A stretch of DNA of 58,363 bases, counting the filler, from Sluysia triapertura (taxonomy: Eukaryota), in assembly GCA_046118255.1 (NCBI GenBank). It is 5 parts of 5 records of this genome, joined end to end, with 100 filler letters (N's around TTAATTAATTAA, not from the genome) between each part and the next. Parts side by side here need not be neighbours in the genome. Positions count along the whole stretch, not along the records: positions 22,501 to 36,051 come from JBJNIA010033154.1; 4 more parts are not named here. One strand, written 5' to 3'. Position 1 is the stretch's first letter, and every line of letters starts with the position of its first letter. Below are positions 4,471 to 35,229 of this stretch, in pieces. Position numbers and translations under genes: made by a program. The notes under the pieces were generated by a model. That model was not told where the DNA came from. It ran no database searches and saw only the letters and a program-made list of their open reading frames with translations.

Positions 4471-7249
4471 ATAAATTTTATGAACATTTCATATTAATAA
4501 CGGATACTGCCAATTAGAATCAGTAATAATATTTGAATTGTATTACCAAAAATTTCAGAAAACGGTCTTTTCAGATTTTTGATTAAACAATTAAAAATTT
4601 ATTCCACATTTTCATAATCATTATTTTCATCAGGAATAGAATTATTATTTAATTGCACTTCCTTCTTTGAGTTGGATCAGGCATCACGGAATATTTTGCC
4701 ATAAACACCGTGTTTAGATATATGCTTTGTGAAGTTGTAAATTTGAGTAATGTATGAGTATGTTTTGAAATTATGTTTGATGTTGATATTGGGAATGAAT
4801 TGTTAAATTGAGTGGATTTAGTTAAATTTAAATGTAACTCACTTACTTTAAGTAAAAATTCTGAAAAAGTCTTTGATAATGTATTTCATTCCCCTAGTAT
4901 ACTAATGAAAACCTTGGTGTAATTTAAAATCACTTTTTCGAGCATGAAAACAAAACTTCGTTAATCCTAAATGTACATCACAAAAGAATCTTTTTCTTAT
5001 CATTTCATTATTAAATGCATTTAATATTGTTTTTATAACTTTTATCATGTTTGATCTCAAACTTAACAAAAACTCTTCATTACTTTTTGAGTCGTCATAA
5101 GAGTTATCAATTACGGATTTGATCAAACTATACTTCAATCTCACTGCCGAATTACAAAAATCGATAGTTTATTTCAACTTCCATTCCAAGTTTAGATCTC
5201 ATGAAACTTGTAATTAATTTTGTTTTACATATTTTTTAAGGTTCTATTGAGATAGGATCAAGATCTACCGTAAACAAATAAAAACGAAAGTACTCTAAAT
5301 TATCAATGATAATTTTATAATACGACAAAAATTATAAACGCAATTCATAGTAGTAATATTCACTAAATATATAATACAAGGTCTGAATCGAATTATGACA
5401 ATAATTTGGATTATTTCTTACTAAACTCCTTGAAAGATCGAACAAAACATCGTGATGTGAAACGCCAGATTGATGAAGACAATTAATATCATGGATGAAC
5501 AGATTCATGTAGTATTATTTCTAATATAAAATTGCATTATTTGTGTCAACTTCTGGAAAAAGTAATTCATAATCAATTTCAAATAAAGTTCATTTTTATC
5601 TCTACCATATTGTGAATAAAATACCATATTGTAGTAATATAATTGTAAAACAATGATTTCATGATATCAAATCTCTCGAAACACTTTCCATAAAGACTGT
5701 ACTAAATGATTCACTAAAAATATTTCTTTGTTCTTCTACCAAATGAACTACTTTTTTATCGTCTGAAGTAAGGAATGCAATAACATTATTGGAAGAATCA
5801 AACACTTTATCATTAATGTAATGTTTATTCATTTTGACTTCATAATCTTAACATATTATTCTGATTTAATATTTATCTTGTTGCAAGATTTTTTTATTCA
5901 AGTCACTTTTGGCTTGTATATCACTTCCAAAATATTGTATGATAATCTCCAACTTTTTGAACTGTTAGCAGCTGCTCAATTTAAATGAAGCATTGGGATA
6001 ATTATGTTTTATTAGAGTACTAAATGGCATTATTCTCTTAATCAAGCTTAAGTGAATCTTATTACAGTTACTGTTGCAAGAAGACAGTCACTCTACTTTA
6101 ATATTATCGTAATAATGCATATTATTGTTCACTTGACTTGTCTTCTTAGATGCTCTTATAAATTTCAAATTGGCATGTATACAACCAGTAGCTTTATTAT
6201 TATTTATTATATTACTTATTTATATTTTGATTTAATTATCTACTCACTATTACAAAAAGATAATAATTGCCTTTATTACAAGGCTACCGATTTAAATAAT
6301 CGACAAGCTTAAGCATCTAAATAATAAATTTATTAATTATATGAAGTTAATTAACTATTTAGTTGGACTGTTTAAATTACTTCGTTTGTATTCTCGGAAT
6401 ACCTGAAATTAAAGAATTATAAAATATTAAAAATATAAATAGTTAAAATTCAAAAATCAATAAATAGTTTTAATACTTACTTAAGAACCACAATCACGTA
6501 TTTTACTGTCACGATCACTTCAAAATGTAACTCATAAATATTGTTCTTTTTAAAGAACAATGGAAAACAGTTTCCTTTTATCGTAATTTTGATGTCGTTT
6601 TAACTCAAATAAATGAGTACTCATTTAAATCATCAAAATTGAAGTTTATATATTTGAAATTTGCGACATAACACTGATACCACATCGTATTGGCTTTTCA
6701 ACGAGGATACTTGGAATTTTGTTATACCAAGTGTATCTTATTACTAATTTTATCAATTTTCCTTTTATAAATCAGACTCAACAGTCGGTAAAAGATCATT
6801 GTTCTACAGAGATATTTATATATTAGTGCAGGTTAATACTACAAAAGAACGTTGTTAATTATTCAGTTGTGTTAGTGGTGTTTAAATTGTTGGTGTTAAT
6901 GCTATTTCCTGTGTTGAACTTTTATAAACGAAACAATTAGGACTTTTGTTTTTATGAAATATGTGTTCAATGATTATAATGCCTTATTTTAGTGATTAAT
7001 GAATTTAGCAATTAGTTCATTTTAAATTTTCAGAAAAAGAGCCAATTTAAGTTTTCCATAATGCAATTTGTAATTTATTGCTTACTATTCTGTACATGAA
7101 ATATATTATTTAATGAATATTTATGTATATTAAATTTTATGATGATCCGATCATAGTCGAATCGAGTTGTGATTTAATGGTTACAGTTGAGGTTGTCTTG
7201 CGTTTTCTGAATTATGGGATTTATAGGTAATTTGTACGTTATAAGCATA

Positions 7250-22500: not shown

Positions 22501-22573
<73 letters not shown>
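22501..22573. repeat. (TAA)n microsatellite (also ~8389-8431, 28705-28730, 36253-36306, 47354-47422, 48869-48915)
   Basis: Seen directly; several abut assembly gaps. Confidence 0.95.
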
Positions 22574-23188: not shown

Positions 23189-23367
23189 AATCTGTACATG
23201 TGTATATTAAAATCTAACTGTATTTTGACGACTAAGTTAAGCTAGTCTTAAACTATTTATTTCATTTGTAAATTCTAATTTCAGTTATCAGCTAGAATAA
23301 ATCTAACTTTAAGGCCTAAAATGCCATTTAGTATAATTGACTATAATAATCTAAAATTGCTAAACGG

Positions 23368-26264
23368 TTAACACACCGAAACACCCACATCCTTCGGTAC
23401 AATCTCTTTGTCTCAAATTCAGTAAGGAAACTCTCTCCCTGATTTATCGCCTGCATCCTCCAAAGTTTCCTAATATTATGTCTCAAATTAAATTCCACAG
23501 GATATTTCAAAAGGATATTAATCTTAACAAGATCTTTGAAAAGAATCAGACCAAAGAGCACTGACCCTCCTCTTATCACTTCTTATGCTGATGAAATCTG
23601 TCTTTACTACAGTTCAGGCGTTGTTCCACCATTCGATCCATCTAAGATTGGTGTAACACATTACTTTATGGATCTCTCAACCTGTTCTCCCTATTCTGAA
23701 GTAAATCTTAATAATCATGAAGTATTGCAAAAACTCTGCACCGGGACCCAATAAAATCACATTCGAACAAATCAAGAATGTTGATCCCACAGCGAAGTTT
23801 CTTTTAATTTTCTTCAATAAAATACTTCAAACTCAAAACGTTCATCAGCCCTGGAAATCTTATAATTAAACAAAATAAATTCTATCTGCACACGTAGTTT
23901 CTTCCTGGCGCCTTGTTGCTGTTCTGGATTCTTTGTACAGCATCTTTACAAAGATTCTCAATGTTCGACTCTTATCATGGATTCATTGTGGGAACCTCAT
24001 CAGTAACCATCAAGCTGCTCTTCTTCGCTCTGATTGTTGCACTGAACATAATTTCCTCCTTCATTCTCTTAATCATAAAAAATACCATAAAATCCAACTC
24101 CACATCATCTTTCTTGACTTGGCTAACACGTTTGGTACACCTTATCTTGTATGGGTCTTCATCAATCCACCCTTAATCTTACCAGAAATCTTTACGATTC
24201 TTCATCGACTCAATGCAAGTATAATAACTTCTTGACGGATAAAGTACCAATCAAATGTGGAGTCAAACAGGGTTGCCCAATATGTGTTGGTGGCTCCTCT
24301 TTTCCTCCTTAACTTGCCTATGCGGATGAGACAGCTACTTCCCATGGTAAGATTCAACAAATGCTTAATTGAATAGTTAAAAAGGCCAAGTCAGCCAATT
24401 TAATTTTCCATCCCAACAAATGTTTTTACTTTAATAATCTCCCGGAAAGCGAGCTCTCCCTATACATTGACAATGTACCTATTCCGGCTATGAAAGATGG
24501 TGATAAAATCATCTACCTGGGTTTCCTTTTGGCGGAGTCAACTTGAAAAAGCAGAACAAAAATTCACTTTTGAAGGAAAACCTTTGATTTTCTCAAAAAA
24601 CTGAATCCTTGTAGTCTTAGTTGTAAAAACAAGTTTCTTATGTACCGCAACTTTCTTCATTCCCGCTTTCATTGAGTAGCCTGCATGCGAAGCAATCCAA
24701 GAATCTCCCTCAAACTGCATATTATGATGAAAAGGTTCGCCAAATATTTAAACATTTTCTGGGCCTTAAAACCTTTCCTCTTAATAATAATTTCTTTGCG
24801 CACAAGAACCACAGTGGTCTTAGTCTCATATTCTCCTGCGATGACTGTATGTGCCAAAATGCAGTCAGTGCCTTTCGACTCTTCAATAGTCGCACATCTT
24901 TTATCCGCACCCTTGCGCTGAATGAACTGTTGAGAGTCACTAGAGCACGACTTAACAAGGTTGCTAATGCCTCTGATGCCTTGATGTGGTTAAATGAATG
25001 TCAGCTGGACAAACATGCGCACTTTCAAACCTAGTGGTCCAAAATTCTCAATGCCCTTTTTAACTTACAGCGAAAATACAAGATTTCTGACGCTTTCCTC
25101 TGCTCCAATGATGACAATCAGATTAAATTATCCATTAGTTGTGAATCCTAGGTGGCAGCGAAAATAGCATCATTTTTAATCGGTTTCATAAGGATAAACT
25201 TGGTAAATACCTTCATGAACTGATTAACATTTCCAATAGTAAATCTTGGAAATCCCTCAAATGTCAGGGTAATTTGTTGACTGTCTCATGAAAAGTCCAC
25301 TCTCGGCAGACCGTTCTCCCTTCAACTTAGCGATTCTTGCTGGGCTTTCATGCTCAAGGCACGTAACATCATCCTTAAATTAAATTTCTCGCCACATAAC
25401 ATTTGCCTTCACCAAACTTTAACTTGCCACTGGTGTGGGTTTGAGAAAGAATCTATTTCTCATGTCCTTTGTTTGTGTCCTCACACTCGCATCGGTCGAA
25501 CTGTGAGACACAATAAACTTCTTGAGTACTTGGTTGAGATTCTTTCTCCTAAGGGCTTTTCCGTAAAAAAGGATCTTCAAACGCCGATTATTGGAGACAC
25601 TCGACGCCCAGATATTCAGCCCGGGTTACTAATTCGTCACAACTTTTTCTCCAATTGATATCTATGAGAACTTTAAATCTAACTTGTCTGTGGAAAACTG
25701 CACGTGCAACTAAGTGTCAGGTTTCCCTCGATACCTTTGTGTGGGTGCCCTTGGTTCCTGGGATCCTGATAATGACCATCTTCTTAAATCTTTGGGTTTT
25801 CGCAAAGCAGAAATTAAGACTCTAGCTCGTCAGCGTGCTCAGCTTTCCCTAGAGTCTTCTTTTAATATTTATAAGGACCACACCCTCCAGTTTCCTGATT
25901 AACTAATTTATTTCCTCTTGTATGTTTGAAAGTTTTCTTACAAATTACTTTATTTCTATTTATACTTTTCTACCGTCTTTTCATGTCTGGTTCTCCTTTC
26001 ACTTTTCATTTTTCAACTCTCTTTCTTCTCCTTCCTCACTACTCATTTGCTCATTTCAAATATTTTTTCTCTCTTCACAAACTGGAAGCCGTCACGTCAA
26101 AATGGTCCAATCCAGAACAATTCAGACTATTCCAACCAATTCAACAAGATCCAGTGGCATTAACTTTGAATTTTACAAATTAACATTGTTTTGATCCCAT
26201 TTTTTAAAACTATCTTTGATTATTTATACTTTGTACCATGTATTAAAAATAAAAGTTTTCAATT
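23368..26264 (+). mobile_element. 5'-truncated, decayed RLE non-LTR retrotransposon (NeSL/Utopia clade), element 1
   Basis: RT motifs SAPGPNKIT, PWKS, SWRLVA, CCTEHNF, FLDLANTFG, GVKQGCP, AYADE, FHPNKC, YLG. Then FMLKARN, CxxC-H-C knuckle, RHN, RPDI, VGALGSWDPDN, IYKDH. Pyrimidine-rich 3' UTR with AATAAA. Confidence 0.92.
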
Positions 26265-26308
26265 CATTGAACTGCGAGAAGTTCCGGGTTCGATCCCCGG
26301 TCAGTCCA
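26265..26308 (+). tRNA. 3' half of tRNA-like gene (anticodon/T arm/acceptor) abutting element 1
   Basis: cattgaactgcgagaagttCCGGGTTCGATCCCCGGTCAGTCCA plus flank ttgtatgaagtctaaca, near-identical to 32095-32160. Confidence 0.85.
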
Positions 26309-27006
26309 TTGTATGAAGTCTAACACATCCTTATTTATATAGTTGTTTACTGAATTAAATTTCGTTAACGATATTTAATGAAGTCTTTTAATAATAAACC
26401 TTTCAGTTTCTTAGAAGTTTTATTTTACTGAATTAGATAGTAAGTTTAGATCCTCAAATAAAAGCCATTATAATCGACAAATTCTACGAGATCCTTTAAA
26501 ATTGAGTAATATTTTGCATTTAGGTTAAGTTAAAAGGAAAACCTATCAATATTCTTACCAATAAAAACTATCTCATAGTATCTTTATAAATCACTTCAAA
26601 CTTAACAAAATTTGTTTGCAGTTGGCTACAAATCACCTTGTAAAATTCCGTTTTGATTTAGGTTAAGATACAAGATATGAATTAAAAGATATTTAAATAT
26701 TATTTTGCCGCATATATTTCTATAATTATGTTTTACGATAATATTACATTTGTTTAAATGTGCTTCGAAATATATTTTAATAGCTACTTGTGAATTTTAG
26801 GAATATTTTAGTACAGATATGAATGTATAGTTTTCATATAAGTTAACGTCTAAAAATATAGATATTTTGATACGCATTTACTTCTTCATGAAAATATGAC
26901 CCTAAAAGGTATGACTTAATATATAGATCTTCTTCTTATAATGAACATTAAAAAATTGTTTTAAAATTATCCACTTTTTAATGCCAATTTCTACATCACA
27001 TCTTCA

Positions 27007-29979
27007 AAATTTAGGTATACCTTCGAATTTTATCACTAATGACTATTATTCCATTATTGTAATTATTACTAGAGAAATAAACTCACTTCTACTCCATCTT
27101 TGATTGTATACATGAAGTCGTAGTCTTCCAGACTTTTCGTCGTATGTGTATCTAATTCCATGCATGTAGATTTATTCTGACTTGGAGAAAACTGAATTGT
27201 GTATGACAAACTTCTACCAAATGATCGCACTTGATGAATATAACCAGCTGGAATAAATAAACAACCTCCTGCTAATACTGTTGCATATGTCCATGGCACT
27301 TCGCTTATATGTTTCTCAGTAAACATATTAATCATTTCAGTGTCTATTATCGAATGACCTTCACCAGTAAATGGATGCTTACATTAAAACAATTTTATTA
27401 ATTTAATTAATTAGTATATGCATTTTTTGATTAAAAAGTGAAAAACAAATTTACAAGAAATTCATTTATGATATAAAATCTGAAATGCATTACATGATTT
27501 TGTATTATGTATATATTTGAAAACTAAATTTAAAATGCTTTCCCTTAGAGGCTAAATATGTTAGTTCAGATCACTAGAATAATTAAACCGCTAATCACGA
27601 TCTGAAAAATAATCTGATCTGAAATTTGCGCTGGGAGTAGCGAAACCCCATAATTATTCATTTATGTAACCTTTGTTTGGTTTTTCACCAAAGTTTTACG
27701 ATAATTATAATTTAATTATGATTTTTAAATTAAATTCATTTTCCGTTACACATTTAATGGATTTTCTAAATTTCAATTTTATCATTTTTTTCAGAATCAT
27801 ATAAATACTCATGTACCACTTGAATGTAACTAATATACTACTTTTGATTGTAAAAGGCCCAATAATTGATTTCTTTGTGACGGATTTATTAATGTTCCTA
27901 ATGAATTAGGATCTTCGGTGAGGCTTTTCCATAGCACAAAATTGGAAATTTATTAAAATTTTAAAATTTAACAATAAAATGAATAATTAAATAATTATCT
28001 TTATTATAGTATAAAAATTTATATTTATTTCATAAGCATATTATGCGATATGTGATTCAGCGTTTGTGCAAAAATGCAAAATGGTATAAATCATGTTTAT
28101 ATTATTTGTAAACATTTACTTATTTTCTAGTGTCAGTAAATAATTCAATTCATTTATTTATATATAAGAAATATTTACTTTCTCCACCATTTTTAACAAA
28201 GATTTATATTTGCCGTTTATTAATATGAAATCTTTGCGTCCATCTGCCATACAATGTAGTTGATGATCTCCGTGATAATGAAGTAATGATCCAGTTCCAC
28301 CATACGCCATCCATAATTCAGTTTCAACAAGATTTCGCAAAATATGATCACATTTTAAAAAATTTGGGTACTAATAAAAATAGAATTATAAATTTATAAT
28401 CAATACTATTTAAAAATGTATTATTTTAATATGTATTATTTTTCTGGTTTTAGATATATAAGATTAAAAAAGTTTTAATACCAATATATAATGTATCTTT
28501 TTATTTTTTCTTAAAACGAAGATAAATTATCCTGTTAATTTTTTGAAATAAGTATGAACGTGTGATTCATTTTCGAAACATTAAAAGAATTATTTTAAAA
28601 AATGAACCGTAAATAGATTGCATATTCTGATGAACTATTCTGTTAAAATCACAATAATTTCATTGTTCTCTTTCAGATGGATAAAAATTTATTTATTTAT
28701 TTATAATAATAATAATAATAATAATAATAACTATGATTTCTTTTAACAGTTCATCAGGCATTGTACTTGCAATATAAATGTCTTGTAATTGATAAAATTC
28801 AATGAATCTAGCCAATGAAGTTTTTAGGGTTTTTTGATTGGTCTGTCGTATTCTTTTTATGACCCATACTTGAGACTGTCCATGACTAAAATTATAGAGT
28901 AATTGAATTTAAAATAATAATATTAATCTTCAAATAAAAATCACGTGAATGAGAAAATAATTATCTGATTTGATATTTTAATATTATTTAAAAATATTTA
29001 GTAATTATTATAAGTTATTTATTCCATTATATAATTTAATTTCATGTAAACTTTGAATGTAAAGTAGCGAAATTACAAAATTCTGTAAATTATGAAAGTC
29101 TTCTCTCTTCACCCTTTCGGGACGGAGACACATATATGCGTCTAAGCAAGTATCTTAAAAATAAGTTATTTTATCAATAAAATGTTTTAAATCAATTTAA
29201 GGCCCCTAATTTCATTTTTCGTTACGTTTCTAAATAAAATACATTTTATATTCACATTTTATATCATGGTTCCAATATAGAAGAAAATGTATTATATGCA
29301 ACCACACCATATAAAGAAAATATACAAAATTTCATTGTAGTGAATGAAAAGTTGGGTTGTGCATAGACCCTTATTTTAAAGAGTATCACATTCTTAACCA
29401 TTAAATTAAATATTAAACATTAAAACTTAAATTAAATATTTTATTGAAAACTTTCTGATTAAAAAAGGAGTTCCTGAAAGGGTTAATTATCACTCTTATT
29501 ATTAATGCAATGATAATAAAATGATATTTTAACTTAAGGAAATATGATCCTTACAATTTTTTCAATCTATCATCTGTCCATGTAGACCTAAATGGTTCGT
29601 TTTTATCAATAGCATTAAGAATTAAAAGAGGTTCTTCCTTCAAAACATTTTGTTCATAAAATTTTTTAGAATTAATTTCATGTTCTGTAGTTTTAACTGG
29701 TCCATCTGACGCTCTTTGATAACCTGAATAATGAAATCAATAAAACAATTGATCCTACTAACCTAAAGATCTTAAATGGCCAATTGGTATCTCTGCAAAC
29801 ATTGATCTGACAATTGTTGGTGGAAATTTGGTATCCATACCATGATCTTTAATAAAATAATCGCTAGGATCATCATTTTCTTCAATACAGTATATATTAA
29901 ATATAAAAATCAAAATGAGATAAAAATTTGTTTGAATATTTAACAAAATAGCTTTGTTTAATTTCGTGTAATAATTCAT
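27007..29979 (-). CDS. Secreted JmjC/cupin_8-domain protein (JMJD7/HSPBAP1/KDM8-like family); 3' end uncertain
   Basis: At least 5 exons: hydrophobic N-terminus, GHLRSLGYQR, PLLILNAI..WTDDRL, LWMAYGGTGSLLHYHGDHQLHCMADGRKDF, GGCLFIPAGYIHQVRS. Frame is conserved across GT-AG introns. Confidence 0.85.
29112..29482 (+). mobile_element. Non-autonomous piggyBac (371 bp) in a JmjC intron
   Basis: TTCA|CCCTTTCGGGA ... TCCTGAAAGGG|TTAA; internal RKCIIC..FHCSE*KVGLCIDPYFKEYH (CRD). Confidence 0.85.
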
Positions 29980-31258: not shown

Positions 31259-31330
31259 CAGTGTTGTCAAAGTGGCGGCCCGCAGAGGCAAATCATGCGG
31301 CCCGTAAAGCAAAAAGGTTTGACACCACTT
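31259..31330. mobile_element. 72-bp hAT/Charlie-type MITE
   Basis: TIRs CAGTGTTGTCAAA / TTTGACACCACTT, 8-bp TSD CTCTAAAG / TTCTAAAG, two internal GCGGCCCG motifs. Confidence 0.85.
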
Positions 31331-32071
31331 TTCTAAAGCCTAGCATTAATACAATGTGTCAAAATGTGTATATTAATGTATAATATTTATATTTGTAAGT
31401 AGAAAGCTTTAAAAGTTGTTTTATAGAGAATAAGTTTTAAGGTTATGTACCAATTATACAAGGCGCATTGATTATTATCTAAGGCAAAGTGATTTTATAC
31501 ATGAACAATAAATAGAAACATGCACCTTCATTAGTTTTTCAGTTGCAATAATCTTACTATTACTGTAATGTGTATGCGCGGAGAGTTATCGTTATTGTAC
31601 GTGAATGTCTCTTTATTGTGTATAGAAAGTATTATTAGAAGTGTTACGATCACTATCATTGTCATTATTGTTAATATTAATATTTTCATCATTAGTACTA
31701 TCGTCACAATTGCTATTATAATTTTAATTATTTTTTAATTTCTGTTATATTTATTAGAACTAAAATCATTATTATTAAATAAGATAAGCTGTTCCGCTAC
31801 AGGTTGAGCGCCAATTTAAAGGATTCAAGTTTAACTTTAAAACTATTACAAACTTTCTTATTGATGGCGTGTTTTGGAAATCCCAGCAAAATTAATACTA
31901 CCTTTTTTATTATGAATTTTTAATTCCTTATTCGCAAAAATTATACATCTATGGTCTACTAGTAGGAGAACGAGTAGACCACAAAACAAACAAAATTTCG
32001 ATTAACATATTGTTGGGATACAGGCCTAAGGTGCCACTTAGCATAATTGAATATAATAATCTAAAATTGTT

Positions 32072-32143
32072 GGGCTGATAGCTCAGTGGTAGAGCATCGA
32101 ACTGCACAGTGAGAGGTGCCGGGTTCGATCCCCGGTTAGTCCA
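32072..32143 (+). tRNA. tRNA-like gene/pseudogene (Ala-type body, GCA in anticodon register, unpaired anticodon stem)
   Basis: Acceptor GGGCTGA/TTAGTCC-A (G3:U70, A73), D stem GCTC/GAGC, T arm CCGGG-TTCGATC-CCCGG, intact A/B boxes and TTTT terminator. Anticodon stem TCGAA/GTGAG does not pair. Confidence 0.8.
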
Positions 32144-34447
32144 TTTTATGAAGTCTAACAATATGAACAATAAAAGTAAACAATTGATATGGAAAAGTAA
32201 CTAATAACTATATTATTGTTAATTATTCTCAGTTTTATAAGTTCATTGACCGACGTTTTTAATGTAACGTTTTAATAACAGAATCATAGATAAATTGTAG
32301 AATTCTTTGTATTGAACTAGTATTAGAAAATAAAATATATGATGAAATTGATTTTCTATTTTGAAAGCTTTAGACGTAACATTTTTTTATTCATCAACGT
32401 ATGTATCAGAATCTTGTAAACTAATTTCAGTACTATTTATTGCAATAAAATGTTCATTGATATTACATATACGTGTTTTATTTATGAGACTTAGACTTAT
32501 ACTTCCAAAAATATCGTGAGGGTCGGTTCGACTAATTAAACACACTTTACACTTGATTGGAGGCGTTTTAATTAGATTTAATCTTAAGTGACAACAAGGA
32601 AGAAAGCAATCCTAAATACTTTAAGAAGATTGTGTAACTTAAGAAGTAAGTTATTTAAAACAGTACTTTTTAGTAAGTGCTTTCAACGACGTTAAGATAG
32701 CCTTATTACGATTTGCCAGTATATTGCAAAATAAATTTATATGTTGAGTCAGCCTATTTTATTCAGTTGTAATATTAAATCAACTTTTGTACGGTCTGAT
32801 TCAGCAGTCAATATTTTAATATAAAAGAATTTTAAGACTAAAAATATATTATTAACAAAATCTATAACAATTTACTAGTAAAGTATACAAAATCCTTACA
32901 AATAATAAAAAGTATACTTATTTTAATACCTTAAGCTTACTGCTTAGGTATATCAAAAATTAGATTTTAATTAAAAGTTGGCTTATCCAGTTACGGTCTA
33001 GGACAAATAAATAGATTTTAAGTAAAATTTTTAAGGACCCTATTATATTAAAATTAGGGTAATTTAAAAACTTATGGACTAAAAAATTACTTATGCACGG
33101 AACTGTGAACTTAGAATATCTCCTGACTAAAAATGAAATCCTCTTCTGTAAAATTTTTAGTGGTTAAAATAATTCCAAAATTCCACTATTTATATTGTGA
33201 TTCGCCAAATTGGCGTTCATTATTATTACTTGCACAATGATTTATTTATTTAGACCACAAAAAATTATTATTAAATGTTTTATTACCATTTCTTTAATAT
33301 TAAATTTTATTTAATTTATTTTACAATAGAAATAATATATAAACACAATTCGAATATTTTTAAATAATATAAAATCAAATAATGTTAATGTAAAATACAA
33401 AATATTTAAAAATATAAAACAGAATATTTAAAATACATAACAATCAAATAATGACATCAATTTAAAATATTTATAAAATTCAAAAGATGTCTATGATTCT
33501 GCGATCCAACACATATTTACTATCATCATATTCAAGTAAACTTAAGGAAAAACAGAAACAATACCGATAAATAATAATAAACTTGATTTGTGTATATACT
33601 GAGTATATTATTAGACCACAAAATATGCGAATCTACAAACTCCGTTAGAAAGAAAAGGTGATATCAAAAGTTTCATGAAATCAAAGCTTTCTTTGAATTC
33701 AACTTTCCGGATTTTACAATTCGATATACGGTACAAATTTAAAAATAGTGCTTACTTCATAGTTTACTGATTATTTAACATTTGTATTTGTCTGATTACA
33801 TCACAGATTCTTACGCTTAACATCATTGCCATGCATTTTAAATAATTTAAATTATATGCATTGCAAAATTGTTGCTGTTACAATTTTCAAAATTAACAAA
33901 TTAATGATTATTAATTTATCCAATTGCTAAATAGCGAATATAATAAATAGAGACTAAAAATTAAATAAGTATATTAAATAAATGGAAAAGAAAGTAAATC
34001 ATGATAAATACTTAAGTTTATTTCAATAGATGGAAAGTAATGAACAAACAAAACAATAATAAAACATTAATAAAACAGTGTATGTAGAAATAAAAAGCTT
34101 GTTGTCATCATTGTAAAAATTGTGTACAGTGATGAGTTCTGATTTATCCAACTAAAAATTATCTTTCTTTAGTATTCGACGCAAAAGTATACTTAACTAA
34201 AATCCTCTTTTTATATCTTTATTTCAAGACGCAGTTACGGTAATTATGTTTTGTTAAAAGTGGCGTCGCTCACTAACTTTTTTTAAAAAATTATTATTGT
34301 CTTTTAATTATTAGTTTTATTACTTATTTAATTATTATCAATTTATTATTAAGAAAGATTTATAGCATGCTCTTTGACAATAAACTTAACTATAAAATTG
34401 TAAAATATGGACTTAAGGTTCGTTCTAAGTAGCGAATATTTATCATT

Positions 34448-35229
34448 AGACATCAGCTTCAGGCCACAGTTATATAATTTTTGTTGTTCTAATTTAAAAA
34501 GACGGAAGAAAAATATAAAATGAATTTCAAAAAGGACTCCATCAAATATTTATCAGTATAAAATTCTAATTCGATGTCTTTAGCGTATAAATCTTTAAAC
34601 TTGTCTTTTTCAATAAGTGTAGTATAGTATCCTTCATTTGTGTCGTTGATTGAAACATGAAAAATAAATCGCATGCATGAAAACAAAAGGGATATGTAAC
34701 CTGAAATTTTTAATTTATCTCTCGAAATTCCAAAACGATCCAAAAACCAGAGAAAATTTTAAATTTTTTTATATAATAATGAAATCCACGGCAATAGATT
34801 CTGCTGCTGCTGTTGCGGTAGAACTGCAAACGAAATTTGAGATATTGCCGTAATTTCGCGAACATTATCATGTCTGACTGATTTTGCTTGAATTTGTAAC
34901 GATTATTTTAAACGCGCGTTTACCAATTAAGAGATTGCTTATAAGCATTCATAATAGAAGAATCACTTTCGTTGGTTCGATGTCACATTCGGAATATGTA
35001 GGATGTCCATATTGATCGACTTCTTGATGCATAAAATCTGTTTCTAAATTCGTTTTTCTTTCCTGTTCGTGTTTTGGTGACTTTGAAACCTTCTTTCAAT
35101 CATTAGGATTGCGATATTGCCGCTTTCGATAAGTTTTCTATAAACTAGATATTCTGGACCACAAAAGTTAATAAAAAGACATCGGTTTAAGGCCCTAGCT
35201 ATATAATTTTTGTAGTTCTAATTAAAAAA
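34448..35229. repeat. Pair of ~53-bp direct repeats ~730 bp apart
   Basis: agacatcagcttcaggccacagttatataatttttgttgttctaatttaaaaa versus agacatcggtttaaggccctagctatataatttttgtagttctaattaaaaaa. Confidence 0.7.

What the first reader, a model, noticed from the sequence alone, without database searches (positions are those of the whole stretch)
23311..26325. RLE retrotransposon inserted inside a tRNA gene: filled site with a matching empty site 6 kb away
Seen: 23311-23367 (aaggcctaaaatgccatttagtataattgactataataatctaaaattgc..cgg) matches the 5' flank of the intact tRNA-like gene (32021-32073: caggcctaaggtgccacttagcataattgaatataataatctaaaattgt.gg). The element's 3' end is followed directly by the tRNA 3' portion and its downstream flank (ccatt.tatgaagtctaaca). 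About 20 nt of the tRNA 5' half are missing at the 5' junction. Known: RLE elements (R2, NeSL, Utopia) insert site-specifically in multicopy RNA genes by target-primed reverse transcription, giving precise 3' junctions and 5' truncations or target deletions. The protein has Utopia/NeSL signatures (EHNF, VGALGSWDP), yet Utopia targets U2 and NeSL-1 targets SL1. Inference: a tRNA-specific family cutting at about tRNA position 24-27. From memory, some planarian/ascidian NeSL-clade families target other tRNAs, so novelty lies in the target and lineage.
Basis: partly seen in the sequence, partly recalled or inferred. Interest (0 to 1): 0.9.

Follow-up and report, generated by a model that had tools for sequence, protein, structure and literature searches.

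The report
Dead retrotransposon inside tRNA-like repeat
A broken, 5'-shortened copy of a jumping gene of the NeSL/R2 type (reverse transcriptase plus restriction-like nuclease) sits inside one copy of a very abundant tRNA-like repeat, at a place in the tRNA where a second copy also sits; such tRNA-targeting elements have been known since 2015, so this is a new family of a known kind.

Summary
23312-23359 matches 32022-32069 (90%) and 26265-26325 matches 32095-32160, so one tRNA-like unit is split by about 2.9 kb. The insert (about 23368-26264) is a decayed, 5'-truncated non-LTR retrotransposon with RT, a CCHC knuckle and an RLE remnant. It has 10 in-frame stops and 3 frame changes. Its nearest relatives (30-44% identity) are about 1,060-1,150-aa proteins with Ulp1 protease, RT and RLE, the NeSL-type architecture. 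It falls in a well-supported clade with them.

Three of those relatives are followed on their contigs by the 3' part of a tRNA gene. Contigs of one public run show about 25-200 copies of the element, rising towards the 3' end. They also show a second insertion, truncated at 24612, that keeps tRNA positions 1-23. Together the two copies put the site at tRNA positions 23-25.

The target is not a canonical tRNA gene. It is a tRNA-like unit with an unpaired anticodon stem, present in hundreds of copies or more.

Kojima & Jurka (2015) already described NeSL-clade families specific for tRNA-Pro, tRNA-Arg and tRNA-Glu genes; the tRNA-Arg family inserts at about the same cloverleaf position. Verdict: real, probably site-specific, a new member of a known kind. 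Specificity rests on only two junctions.

The parts
23312..23359 (+). 5' flank of the interrupted tRNA-like unit (upstream part of the repeat)
   Evidence: 43/48 identical to 32022-32069. In run X1, 261 contigs diverge from the window just upstream of it, at 23311/23312 (table 7).
23360..23367 (+). 5' junction zone: probably the short spacer and the first two G of the tRNA, then the element; the exact break is not resolved
   Evidence: Other units carry a similar 6-7-nt spacer followed by G-rich tRNA starts (table 5c). No significant tRNA 5'-half remnant lies beyond it.
23368..26264 (+). Decayed, 5'-truncated copy of an RLE-type non-LTR retrotransposon (GC 37.7% against 24.9% around it)
   Evidence: tblastn aligns it to residues about 272-1057 of P0003 (1061 aa) and 295-1076 of P0004 (1079 aa) across three frames. 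10 in-frame stops and 3 frame changes. Summed contig depth rises from about 700 to about 5,800 towards the 3' end.
23732..24564 (+). Reverse transcriptase domain (frame change near 24130-24140)
   Evidence: Weak Pfam RVT_1 hit on one piece. tblastn E 1e-28 and 3e-18 to the RVT_1 region of P0003. Motifs read at FLDLANTFG 24110-24136, GVKQGCP 24259-24279 and AYADE 24316-24330.
25425..25478 (+). CCHC zinc knuckle (C-x2-C-x8-H-x4-C)
   Evidence: Read. Aligns with the invariant C..C...H...C columns of seven relatives.
25506..25767 (+). Restriction-like endonuclease region, broken: RHN and RPD are kept, the D-x-K place reads R-H-N and a frame change follows; the C-terminal VGALGSWDP motif is kept
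   Evidence: Alignment with P0003, P0004, P0008, P0047, P0048, P0050 and P0052; coordinates.
25903..26264 (+). 3' untranslated region of the element; no poly(A) tail
   Evidence: The ORF stop is at 25900-25902. This is the highest-depth part of the element, about 4,800-5,900. The tRNA-derived sequence begins at 26265.
26265..26308 (+). 3' part of the interrupted tRNA-like gene (positions 25-73, with a 5-nt gap in the anticodon loop relative to the copy at 32072-32143)
   Evidence: Best local alignment. The B-box motif at 26287-26297 is one of only two matches in the window, 0.03 expected.
26309..26325 (+). Trailer of the repeat unit after the tRNA-like gene
   Evidence: Matches 32144-32160. 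368 contigs diverge just behind 26325 (table 7).
32022..32160 (+). Uninterrupted paralogous unit: 5' flank 32022-32069, tRNA-like gene 32072-32143, T-run and trailer 32144-32160
   Evidence: Rfam tRNA 42.6 bits. ARAGORN 'tRNA-???' with a 4-base anticodon call. The minimum-energy fold is not a cloverleaf.

Best explanation
The insert is a dead, 5'-truncated copy of a NeSL-like non-LTR retrotransposon: RT, a CCHC knuckle and a restriction-like endonuclease, with full-length relatives that also carry an N-terminal Ulp1-like protease. The family inserts, in the same orientation as the target, into a tRNA-like sequence between about positions 23 and 25, on the 3' side of the D stem. Inferred mechanism, by analogy with R2: the protein recognises the tRNA-like DNA, the RLE nicks the bottom strand at 24/25, and the freed 3'-OH primes reverse transcription of the element RNA from its 3' end. 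This gives a fixed 3' junction. Incomplete cDNA synthesis and variable second-strand processing give 5' truncation and a variable 5' junction: here a loss of about 22 nt of the tRNA, in a second copy no loss. The insertion separates the A box from the B box and so inactivates that unit. The landing site is a unit present in hundreds of copies or more, so insertions are cheap for the host. Shown: anatomy, decay, both junctions of this copy, the 5' junction of a second copy, family copy number, and kinship with Ulp1-RT-RLE elements of which several abut tRNA 3' parts. Inferred: the nicking position, target recognition, and that most copies share the site.
For: Flank matches are far above chance. 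RT, CCHC and RLE anatomy and collinearity with about 1,060-aa relatives. In run X1, table 5c shows a contig that runs from the unit's 5' flank (to 23358) through 30 letters that read as spacer plus tRNA positions 1-23, straight into the element at 24612; its depth of 26 is single-copy-like. That is a second insertion, with a different truncation point, at the same tRNA position. Element depth rises 5' to 3' from about 700 to about 5,800, against about 20-40 in the single-copy flanks, as TPRT predicts. No large cluster of loose ends running out of the element's 3' end is among those listed, whereas 138 contigs enter at 26274 from a tRNA 5' half, which are uninterrupted units (table 7). In a tree the element sits in an 11-row clade (SH-aLRT 100) of Ulp1+RT+RLE proteins. 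Three of these are followed by a tRNA T arm, acceptor strand and, where the contig reaches that far, a T run: L005 4630-4670, L007 4240-4290, L009 4516-4543. Published precedent exists: NeSL-1_TV in tRNA-Pro, LIN15_SM in tRNA-Arg at about positions 23-26, LIN25_SM in tRNA-Glu (PMC4640811).
Against: Only two junctions were seen, one 3' and one 5', from different copies; I could not tabulate the 3' flanks of all copies. Logan contigs are short and break at repeats, so the absence of listed loose ends at the 3' end is weak evidence (only 6 of 547 were shown). The target unit is so abundant that some chance hits are expected for any element. The tRNA-derived part carries a 5-nt gap next to the junction region, so an alternative register with the junction at 38/39 exists, though it fits worse (5/11 against 10/11 matches). 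The relatives with tRNA flanks join the tRNA near position 48/49, not 24/25, and their flanks score below threshold with the Rfam tRNA model (12-15 bits). Clade membership was not tested against named NeSL, LIN or Utopia references.
Confidence: 0.72

Rival explanations
1. Chance insertion: the element has no or only weak target preference, and this copy, like the second one, landed in an abundant repeat by accident.
For: The tRNA-like unit is very abundant: at least 368 distinct 3' contexts and very high summed depth. Only two junctions support specificity. Some NeSL-clade families have weak specificity (Utopia in crocodilians, PMC4640811).
Against: Even thousands of about 150-bp units cover well under 1% of about 736 Mb of contigs. 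Two independent insertions fall within about 2 nt of each other inside a 72-nt gene, in the same orientation. Related elements also abut tRNA 3' parts.
Confidence: 0.12
2. The element is specific not for tRNA genes as such but for this particular mobile or amplified repeat (a tRNA-derived SINE- or MITE-like unit of about 150-170 bp), a parasite of a parasite. Genuine tRNA genes of the genome are not hit.
For: The unit has a conserved 5' flank of at least 48 nt and a 17-nt trailer with sharp ends in hundreds of contigs. Its anticodon stem is unpaired and no isotype can be called. The uninterrupted copy is bounded by a 9-nt inverted repeat, 32006-32014 and 32157-32165 (read).
Against: The nature of the unit is unresolved: it keeps A and B boxes and a T-run terminator, so it may be a transcribed gene family. 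Relatives and published families hit ordinary tRNA genes. The site lies in the most tRNA-like part, the D arm.
Confidence: 0.13
3. The tRNA-like 3' part belongs to the element itself (a tRNA-like 3' module), and the 5' flank match comes from an unrelated neighbouring fragment of the repeat.
For: The sequence just before 26274 can be read either as tRNA or as element.
Against: The 5' flank, the 3' part and the trailer all belong to one unit and are collinear with the uninterrupted copy. Hundreds of units exist without the element, and 138 contigs enter at 26274 from a tRNA 5' half. The summed depth jumps roughly 40-fold between the 3' UTR and the tRNA-like part.
Confidence: 0.03

Closest known systems
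LIN15_SM and LIN25_SM (planarian Schmidtea mediterranea, NeSL clade; Kojima & Jurka 2015, PMC4640811)
   Same: RLE-type non-LTR elements inserted inside tRNA genes in the gene's orientation with a fixed 3' junction. In S6 Fig the LIN15_SM 3' flank starts at about tRNA positions 23-26, the same cloverleaf place as here. They come from an AT-rich genome.
   Different: Their targets are tRNA-Arg (LIN15_SM) and tRNA-Glu (LIN25_SM); here it is a tRNA-like unit with an Ala-like acceptor and T arm and GCA at the anticodon place. The 3' terminal letters printed in S6 Fig differ from this element's. Protein similarity could not be tested because no Repbase sequences were available.
NeSL-1_TV (Trichomonas vaginalis; tRNA-Pro-specific, PMC4640811)
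   Same: An RLE element related to NeSL with tRNA-gene specificity.
   Different: Different tRNA and a different host kingdom. Its phylogenetic position was unresolved in that paper. Not compared by sequence here.
NeSL-1 (Caenorhabditis elegans; spliced-leader SL1 genes) and Utopia (U2 snRNA genes)
   Same: Ulp1-like protease + RT + CCHC + RLE architecture (NeSL-1, Utopia-1_TSP), as in this element's nearest relatives. Precise 3' junctions and variable 5' junctions in small multicopy RNA genes.
   Different: The target is SL1 or U2, not tRNA. The flanks here are not U2 or SL sequences. The protease part is missing from this truncated copy.
R2 (28S rDNA; solved structures 8GH6, 9DOU, 9NL2-4)
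   Same: Mechanistic model: site-specific RLE nick and target-primed reverse transcription. The relative P0004 matches R2 proteins at E 1e-54 to 1e-55 over the RT.
   Different: R2 has N-terminal zinc-finger and Myb DNA-binding domains and no Ulp1 protease, and it targets 28S rDNA.
Dada DNA transposons (tRNA and snRNA genes; PMC8869645); from my own knowledge also Dewa (Tx1 clade), Dictyostelium TRE and yeast Ty3
   Same: Mobile elements that use tRNA genes as safe landing sites.
   Different: Dada is a DDE DNA transposon. Dewa and TRE carry an AP-type endonuclease. TRE and Ty3 land beside tRNA genes, not inside them.

Membership tests
RLE-type non-LTR retrotransposon | Reverse transcriptase domain with the non-LTR motif order | tested here: met
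   tblastn to the RVT_1 regions of P0003 and P0004, E 1e-28 to 4e-65. Weak direct Pfam RVT_1 hit on one piece (17.7 bits, below the cutoff) because the ORF is in pieces.
RLE-type non-LTR retrotransposon | CCHC knuckle and the PD motif of a PD-(D/E)xK nuclease C-terminal to the RT | tested here: met
   C-x2-C-x8-H-x4-C at 25425-25478, RHN at 25506 and RPD at 25605-25613, aligned to invariant columns of seven relatives.
RLE-type non-LTR retrotransposon | Intact (D/E)xK catalytic pair | tested here: not met
   In this copy the aligned D-x-K place reads R-H-N and a frame change follows. The relatives have D-x-K. This fits a dead copy and does not argue against family membership.
RLE-type non-LTR retrotransposon | No LTRs; 5'-truncated copies and more 3' than 5' sequence in the genome | tested here: met
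   No terminal repeats in the piece. About 270 N-terminal residues are missing relative to P0003 and P0004. Depth gradient 5' to 3'.
NeSL clade (sensu Kojima & Jurka 2015) | RT phylogeny groups it with NeSL-1, R5, Utopia or LIN references | not tested
   No named reference sequences could be obtained. The tree contains only unnamed metagenomic or Logan proteins plus AP-endonuclease LINE outgroups.
NeSL clade (sensu Kojima & Jurka 2015) | [quoted passage not shown] | not testable with these tools
   This copy lacks the N-terminal part. 8 of the 10 other members of its 11-row clade carry PF02902: P0004 and P0047-P0053 by precomputed hits, with P0004's hit also found by hmmscan above the cutoff. 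P0003 scores just below the cutoff (20.1 against 20.7 bits) and P0008 has no hit.
Site-specific retrotransposon | Independent copies share the same 3' junction in the same target | tested here: inconclusive
   One 3' junction (this copy, 26264/26265) and one 5' junction of another copy at tRNA position about 23 (table 5c) agree within about 2 nt. No table of all copies was possible.
tRNA gene (the target) | Scores as tRNA with a covariance model; A box, B box and T-run terminator | tested here: met
   Rfam RF00005 42.6 bits against a gathering score of 29. The B-box pattern occurs only at 26287 and 32122 in the window. A TTTT run follows position 73.
tRNA gene (the target) | Cloverleaf with a paired anticodon stem and an assignable anticodon | tested here: not met
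   ARAGORN gives 'tRNA-???' with a 4-base anticodon. Positions 27-31 and 39-43 pair at only 2 of 5 places (read). The minimum-energy fold is not a cloverleaf. The consensus of uninterrupted units shows the same defect (table 7).
Utopia | Insertion in, or next to, U2 snRNA gene sequence | tested here: not met
   The flanks are a tRNA-like unit. No U2 hit in the Rfam scan of the piece at E up to 1.
LIN15_SM-like tRNA-targeting family | Target is a tRNA-Arg gene | tested here: not met
   The D arm and T arm differ from the tRNA-Arg sequences printed in S6 Fig. Only the position of insertion is shared.

The most novel reading that the evidence does not exclude
The Ulp1-RT-RLE clade that holds this element may be a broad, largely uncatalogued radiation of tRNA-targeting retrotransposons whose members have shifted both the tRNA species (Arg-, Leu- and Lys-like flanks in L005, L007 and L009; the tRNA-like unit here) and the cut position in the cloverleaf (about 48/49 there, 24/25 here). 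This family may further have specialised on an amplified tRNA-derived repeat with hundreds to thousands of copies, a parasite of a parasite. That would give a natural series of related nucleases with different, short, well-defined DNA targets.
Probability: 0.3. Interest if true: 0.55.

Novelty: new member of a known kind. Interest (0 to 1): 0.4.

Why it matters
Site-specific RLE retrotransposons are the model for target-primed reverse transcription, and R2 is being developed as a tool for writing genes into safe-harbour sites (for example PMC11371274 and PMC10499050, seen). Almost all mechanistic work is on R2 in 28S rDNA. A set of related NeSL-like elements that recognise different tRNA-like targets and cut at different cloverleaf positions would help show how target choice changes in this enzyme class. 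For genome annotation the lesson is practical: split tRNA-like fragments around a higher-GC block are insertion scars, and the abundant tRNA-like unit should be treated as a repeat, not as hundreds of tRNA genes. As a single dead copy of a kind already published, the locus itself is of modest interest.

Tried and rejected
- The search for homologous proteins with the 125-aa RLE piece found nothing. Its length filter excludes full-length kin; the unfiltered representative search then gave 40 hits.
- Exact look-ups of three window ORFs found no contig, so neither the organism nor further copies could be fetched.
- A metagenome scan for the unit's T-arm plus trailer found nothing.
- The Atlas search of the neighbouring cupin/JmjC exon gave no usable taxonomy.
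- Pfam on the ten stop-free pieces gave only one weak RVT_1 hit.
- An Rfam scan of six relatives' contigs at E up to 0.1 found nothing. Targeted scans gave only sub-threshold tRNA hits on the T arms, 12-15 bits, so the tRNA flanks of the relatives rest on direct reading plus the B-box pattern count.
- A remnant of the tRNA 5' half at the 5' junction was looked for and not found.
- The alternative register with the 3' junction at tRNA 38/39 was rejected: 5/11 against 10/11 matches, and it disagrees with the second copy's 5' junction.
- Reading the tRNA-like gene as a canonical tRNA (Cys-GCA or Ala) was rejected for lack of an anticodon stem.
The read-through used for the tree and the alignment had X at every stop and frame change and stayed inside the scripts; a C-terminal part with X was printed.
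Full report
WHAT IS THERE.
- 23312-23359 matches 32022-32069 in 43 of 48 positions (D4).
- The best local alignment of the 3' side runs from 26265 to 26325 against 32095-32160, with one 5-nt gap in the anticodon loop (ungapped version D3).
- Both scores lie 17 or more standard deviations above shuffles.
- The uninterrupted copy carries a tRNA-like gene at 32072-32143 (Rfam tRNA 42.6 bits, gathering 29), followed by TTTT and a 17-nt trailer shared by both copies.
- The B-box pattern GGTTCRANYCC occurs in the window only at 26287 and 32122, with 0.03 expected.

THE INSERT. Between the two halves lies about 2.9 kb (about 23368-26264) with 37.7% GC against 24.9% around it.
- The reading frame is in pieces: 10 in-frame stops and 3 frame changes along the path that aligns with relatives.
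- The pieces carry RT motifs (FLDLANTFG, GVKQGCP, AYADE), a C-x2-C-x8-H-x4-C knuckle at 25425-25478, RHN and RPD of a restriction-like endonuclease, and the C-terminal VGALGSWDP motif. The stop is at 25900-25902 and a 362-nt 3' UTR without poly(A) follows.
- In this copy the aligned D-x-K place of the nuclease reads R-H-N, and a frame change follows. The copy is dead.
- Pfam alone sees only a weak RVT_1 hit, because the ORF is fragmented.

RELATIVES. A search of 1.84 billion representatives with the RLE piece gave 40 hits, the best full-length ones at 35-39% identity.
- tblastn shows the element collinear with residues about 272-1057 of P0003 (1061 aa) and 295-1076 of P0004 (1079 aa). About 270 N-terminal residues are therefore missing, which is 5' truncation.
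- P0004 and most of its kin carry an N-terminal Ulp1 protease domain (PF02902) before the RT, and P0003 scores just below the cutoff for it. This is the architecture described for NeSL-1 and Utopia-1_TSP (PMC4640811).
- In a maximum-likelihood tree made with an X-joined read-through, the element falls in an 11-row clade (SH-aLRT 100) with P0003, P0004, P0008 and P0047-P0053. Its own branch is long, as expected for a decayed copy.
- P0004 matches solved R2 proteins over the RT at E about 1e-55.

THE JUNCTIONS.
- 3' side: the element ends at 26264, and tRNA-derived sequence starts at 26265, which is position 25. The first 11 nt match positions 25-35 in 10 of 11 places. The rival register (junction at 38/39) matches 5 of 11.
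- 5' side: the unit's flank runs to 23359. A short spacer-like stretch and two G follow. No significant trace of the tRNA 5' half was found. About 22 nt of target (positions 3-24) are lost.

OTHER COPIES. One public run (X1, kept as Logan contigs, possibly the source sample) holds the stretch. I laid its contigs on 23200-26500 at 80% likeness.
- The summed depth is about 20-40 in the single-copy flanks, about 700 at the element's 5' part and about 5,800 in its 3' UTR. That suggests tens to a couple of hundred copies with the 3' bias of TPRT. This is rough, because the tool warns that summed depth is not a copy number.
- The longest listed pieces differ from this copy by about 11-13%, so the copy is old.
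- Table 5c lists a contig (depth 26) that runs from the unit's 5' flank (to 23358) through 30 letters that read as spacer plus tRNA positions 1-23, and then continues in the element at 24612. This is a second, differently truncated insertion in another unit, with its 5' junction at position about 23.
- Combined with the 3' junction here (24/25), the two nicks lie within about 2 nt of each other, as in R2.
- Among the loose ends shown, none leaves the element's 3' end, while 138 contigs enter at 26274 from a tRNA 5' half; those are uninterrupted units. This is weak support, because only 6 of 547 loose ends were printed and short contigs break at repeats.

THE TARGET IS A REPEAT, NOT AN ORDINARY tRNA GENE.
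- 261 contigs diverge from the window just upstream of 23311/23312, and 368 diverge just behind 26325. The summed depth over the unit is roughly 10 to 40 times that of the element. There are therefore at least hundreds of units.
- The loose-end consensus upstream still agrees with the letters upstream of the uninterrupted copy for about 15 nt, so most units extend a little further 5' than the interrupted one.
- ARAGORN cannot name the tRNA. Positions 27-31 and 39-43 pair at only 2 of 5 places. The minimum-energy fold is not a cloverleaf. The consensus of uninterrupted units has the same defect.
- The acceptor stem has G3-U70 with A73, and the T arm looks Ala-like from memory, while the nominal anticodon is GCA. 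I leave the isotype open.
- A box, B box and terminator are intact, so the unit may be transcribed.
- Whether it is a tRNA-derived SINE- or MITE-like element or an amplified gene family is unresolved. The uninterrupted copy is bounded by a 9-nt inverted repeat (32006-32014 and 32157-32165), which may be chance in AT-rich DNA.

DO RELATIVES ALSO SIT IN tRNA GENES? I fetched nine contigs of relatives.
- Three continue past their 3' UTR into a 5-bp T stem with a GGTTCGA-type loop and a 7-nt acceptor strand. A T run follows where the contig reaches that far: L005 4630-4670, L007 4240-4290 after a (TTTTTAC)n tail, and L009 4516-4543 at the contig end.
- The B-box pattern occurs once in each of these loci at that place, and only once elsewhere in the nine loci, inside the L008 ORF.
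- From memory the flanks look Arg-, Leu- and Lys-like. The Rfam tRNA model gives only 12-15 bits, as expected for a third of a tRNA.
- In these three the tRNA part starts near position 48/49, not 24/25.
- L002 (P0004) ends in (TAC)n. The other contigs end before any target is seen.

WHAT IS KNOWN. [quoted passage not shown]
- Their S6 Fig shows LIN15_SM 3' ends followed by tRNA-Arg sequence starting at about positions 23-26 (the text is machine-read and noisy).
- RLE elements inside tRNA genes, even at this cloverleaf position, are therefore published.
- Literature searches found no later survey of tRNA-targeting RLE elements.

MECHANISM (inferred by analogy with R2, for example PMC10499050, listed). 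The protein recognises the tRNA-like DNA. The RLE nicks the antisense strand at 24/25. Reverse transcription of the element RNA is primed from that nick, which fixes the 3' junction. Premature termination and variable second-strand events give 5' truncation and variable target loss. The insertion splits the internal Pol III promoter. How the element is transcribed is unknown; read-through by Pol III is unlikely because of the many T runs.

RIVALS.
- Chance insertion into an abundant repeat (0.12).
- Specificity for this repeat rather than for tRNA genes in general (0.13). This is a variant of the main reading, not a contradiction of it.
- The tRNA part being an element module (0.03). The collinear 5' flank and trailer, and the many element-free units, argue against this.

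VERDICT. The target is a high-copy tRNA-like repeat, the specificity rests on two junctions, and the kind is already known. I rate it a new member of a known kind, interest 0.4.

LIMITS. No Repbase references were available. I had one reads call only. 

Noticed in passing
window 27069-27335 (-), 28158-28340 (-), probably 29560-29890 (-): Exons of a host gene for a cupin/JmjC-type protein on the minus strand, between the two tRNA-like units. The exon ORFs carry motifs such as HYHGD and FIPAGYIH. The Atlas features search gives Cupin_8/JmjC clusters at 0.93-0.94. Introns are AT-rich, roughly 0.8-1.2 kb.
   Followed up: partly
window 34439-34500 and 35168-35229; inverted partner 31935-31957: A 62-nt direct repeat (81%), 729 nt apart, whose core (AGGCC..AG.TATATAATTTTTG) also occurs inverted just upstream of the uninterrupted tRNA-like unit (D2, I11, I12). 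It resembles the AGGCCTAAGG...ATATAATAAT part of the unit's own 5' flank. It may be a shared promoter-like element or another small repeat family.
   Followed up: no
window 32006-32014 and 32157-32165: A perfect 9-nt inverted repeat (CATATTGTT / AACAATATG) brackets the uninterrupted tRNA-like unit. With the ATAT on both sides it could be read as short terminal inverted repeats plus a target-site duplication of a MITE-like element, or it could be chance in AT-rich DNA.
   Followed up: no
window about 31259-31330: A GC-rich island in AT-rich DNA, bounded by 13-nt inverted repeats (12/13) about 45 nt apart. It looks like a small hairpin or MITE-like insertion.
   Followed up: no
window 31975-31990, 33250-33262, 33611-33623, 35160-35171: The motif (T)AGACCACAAAA recurs four times in 3.5 kb (two copies listed as D16). 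At 31953-31982 it is part of a hairpin (GGTCTACT...AGTAGACC).
   Followed up: no
L005 4630-4670; L007 4180-4290; L009 4470-4543; L002 4420-4436: Metagenomic or Logan contigs of Ulp1+RT+RLE relatives end their 3' UTRs against tRNA 3' parts (Arg-, Leu- and Lys-like by eye). L007 and L009 carry short A/T-rich repeat tails, (TTTTTAC)n and (ATTTT)n, before the junction. L002 ends in (TAC)n.
   Followed up: partly
window 22501-22573 and 28705-28731: (TAA)n microsatellites. The first lies at the piece's edge.
   Followed up: no
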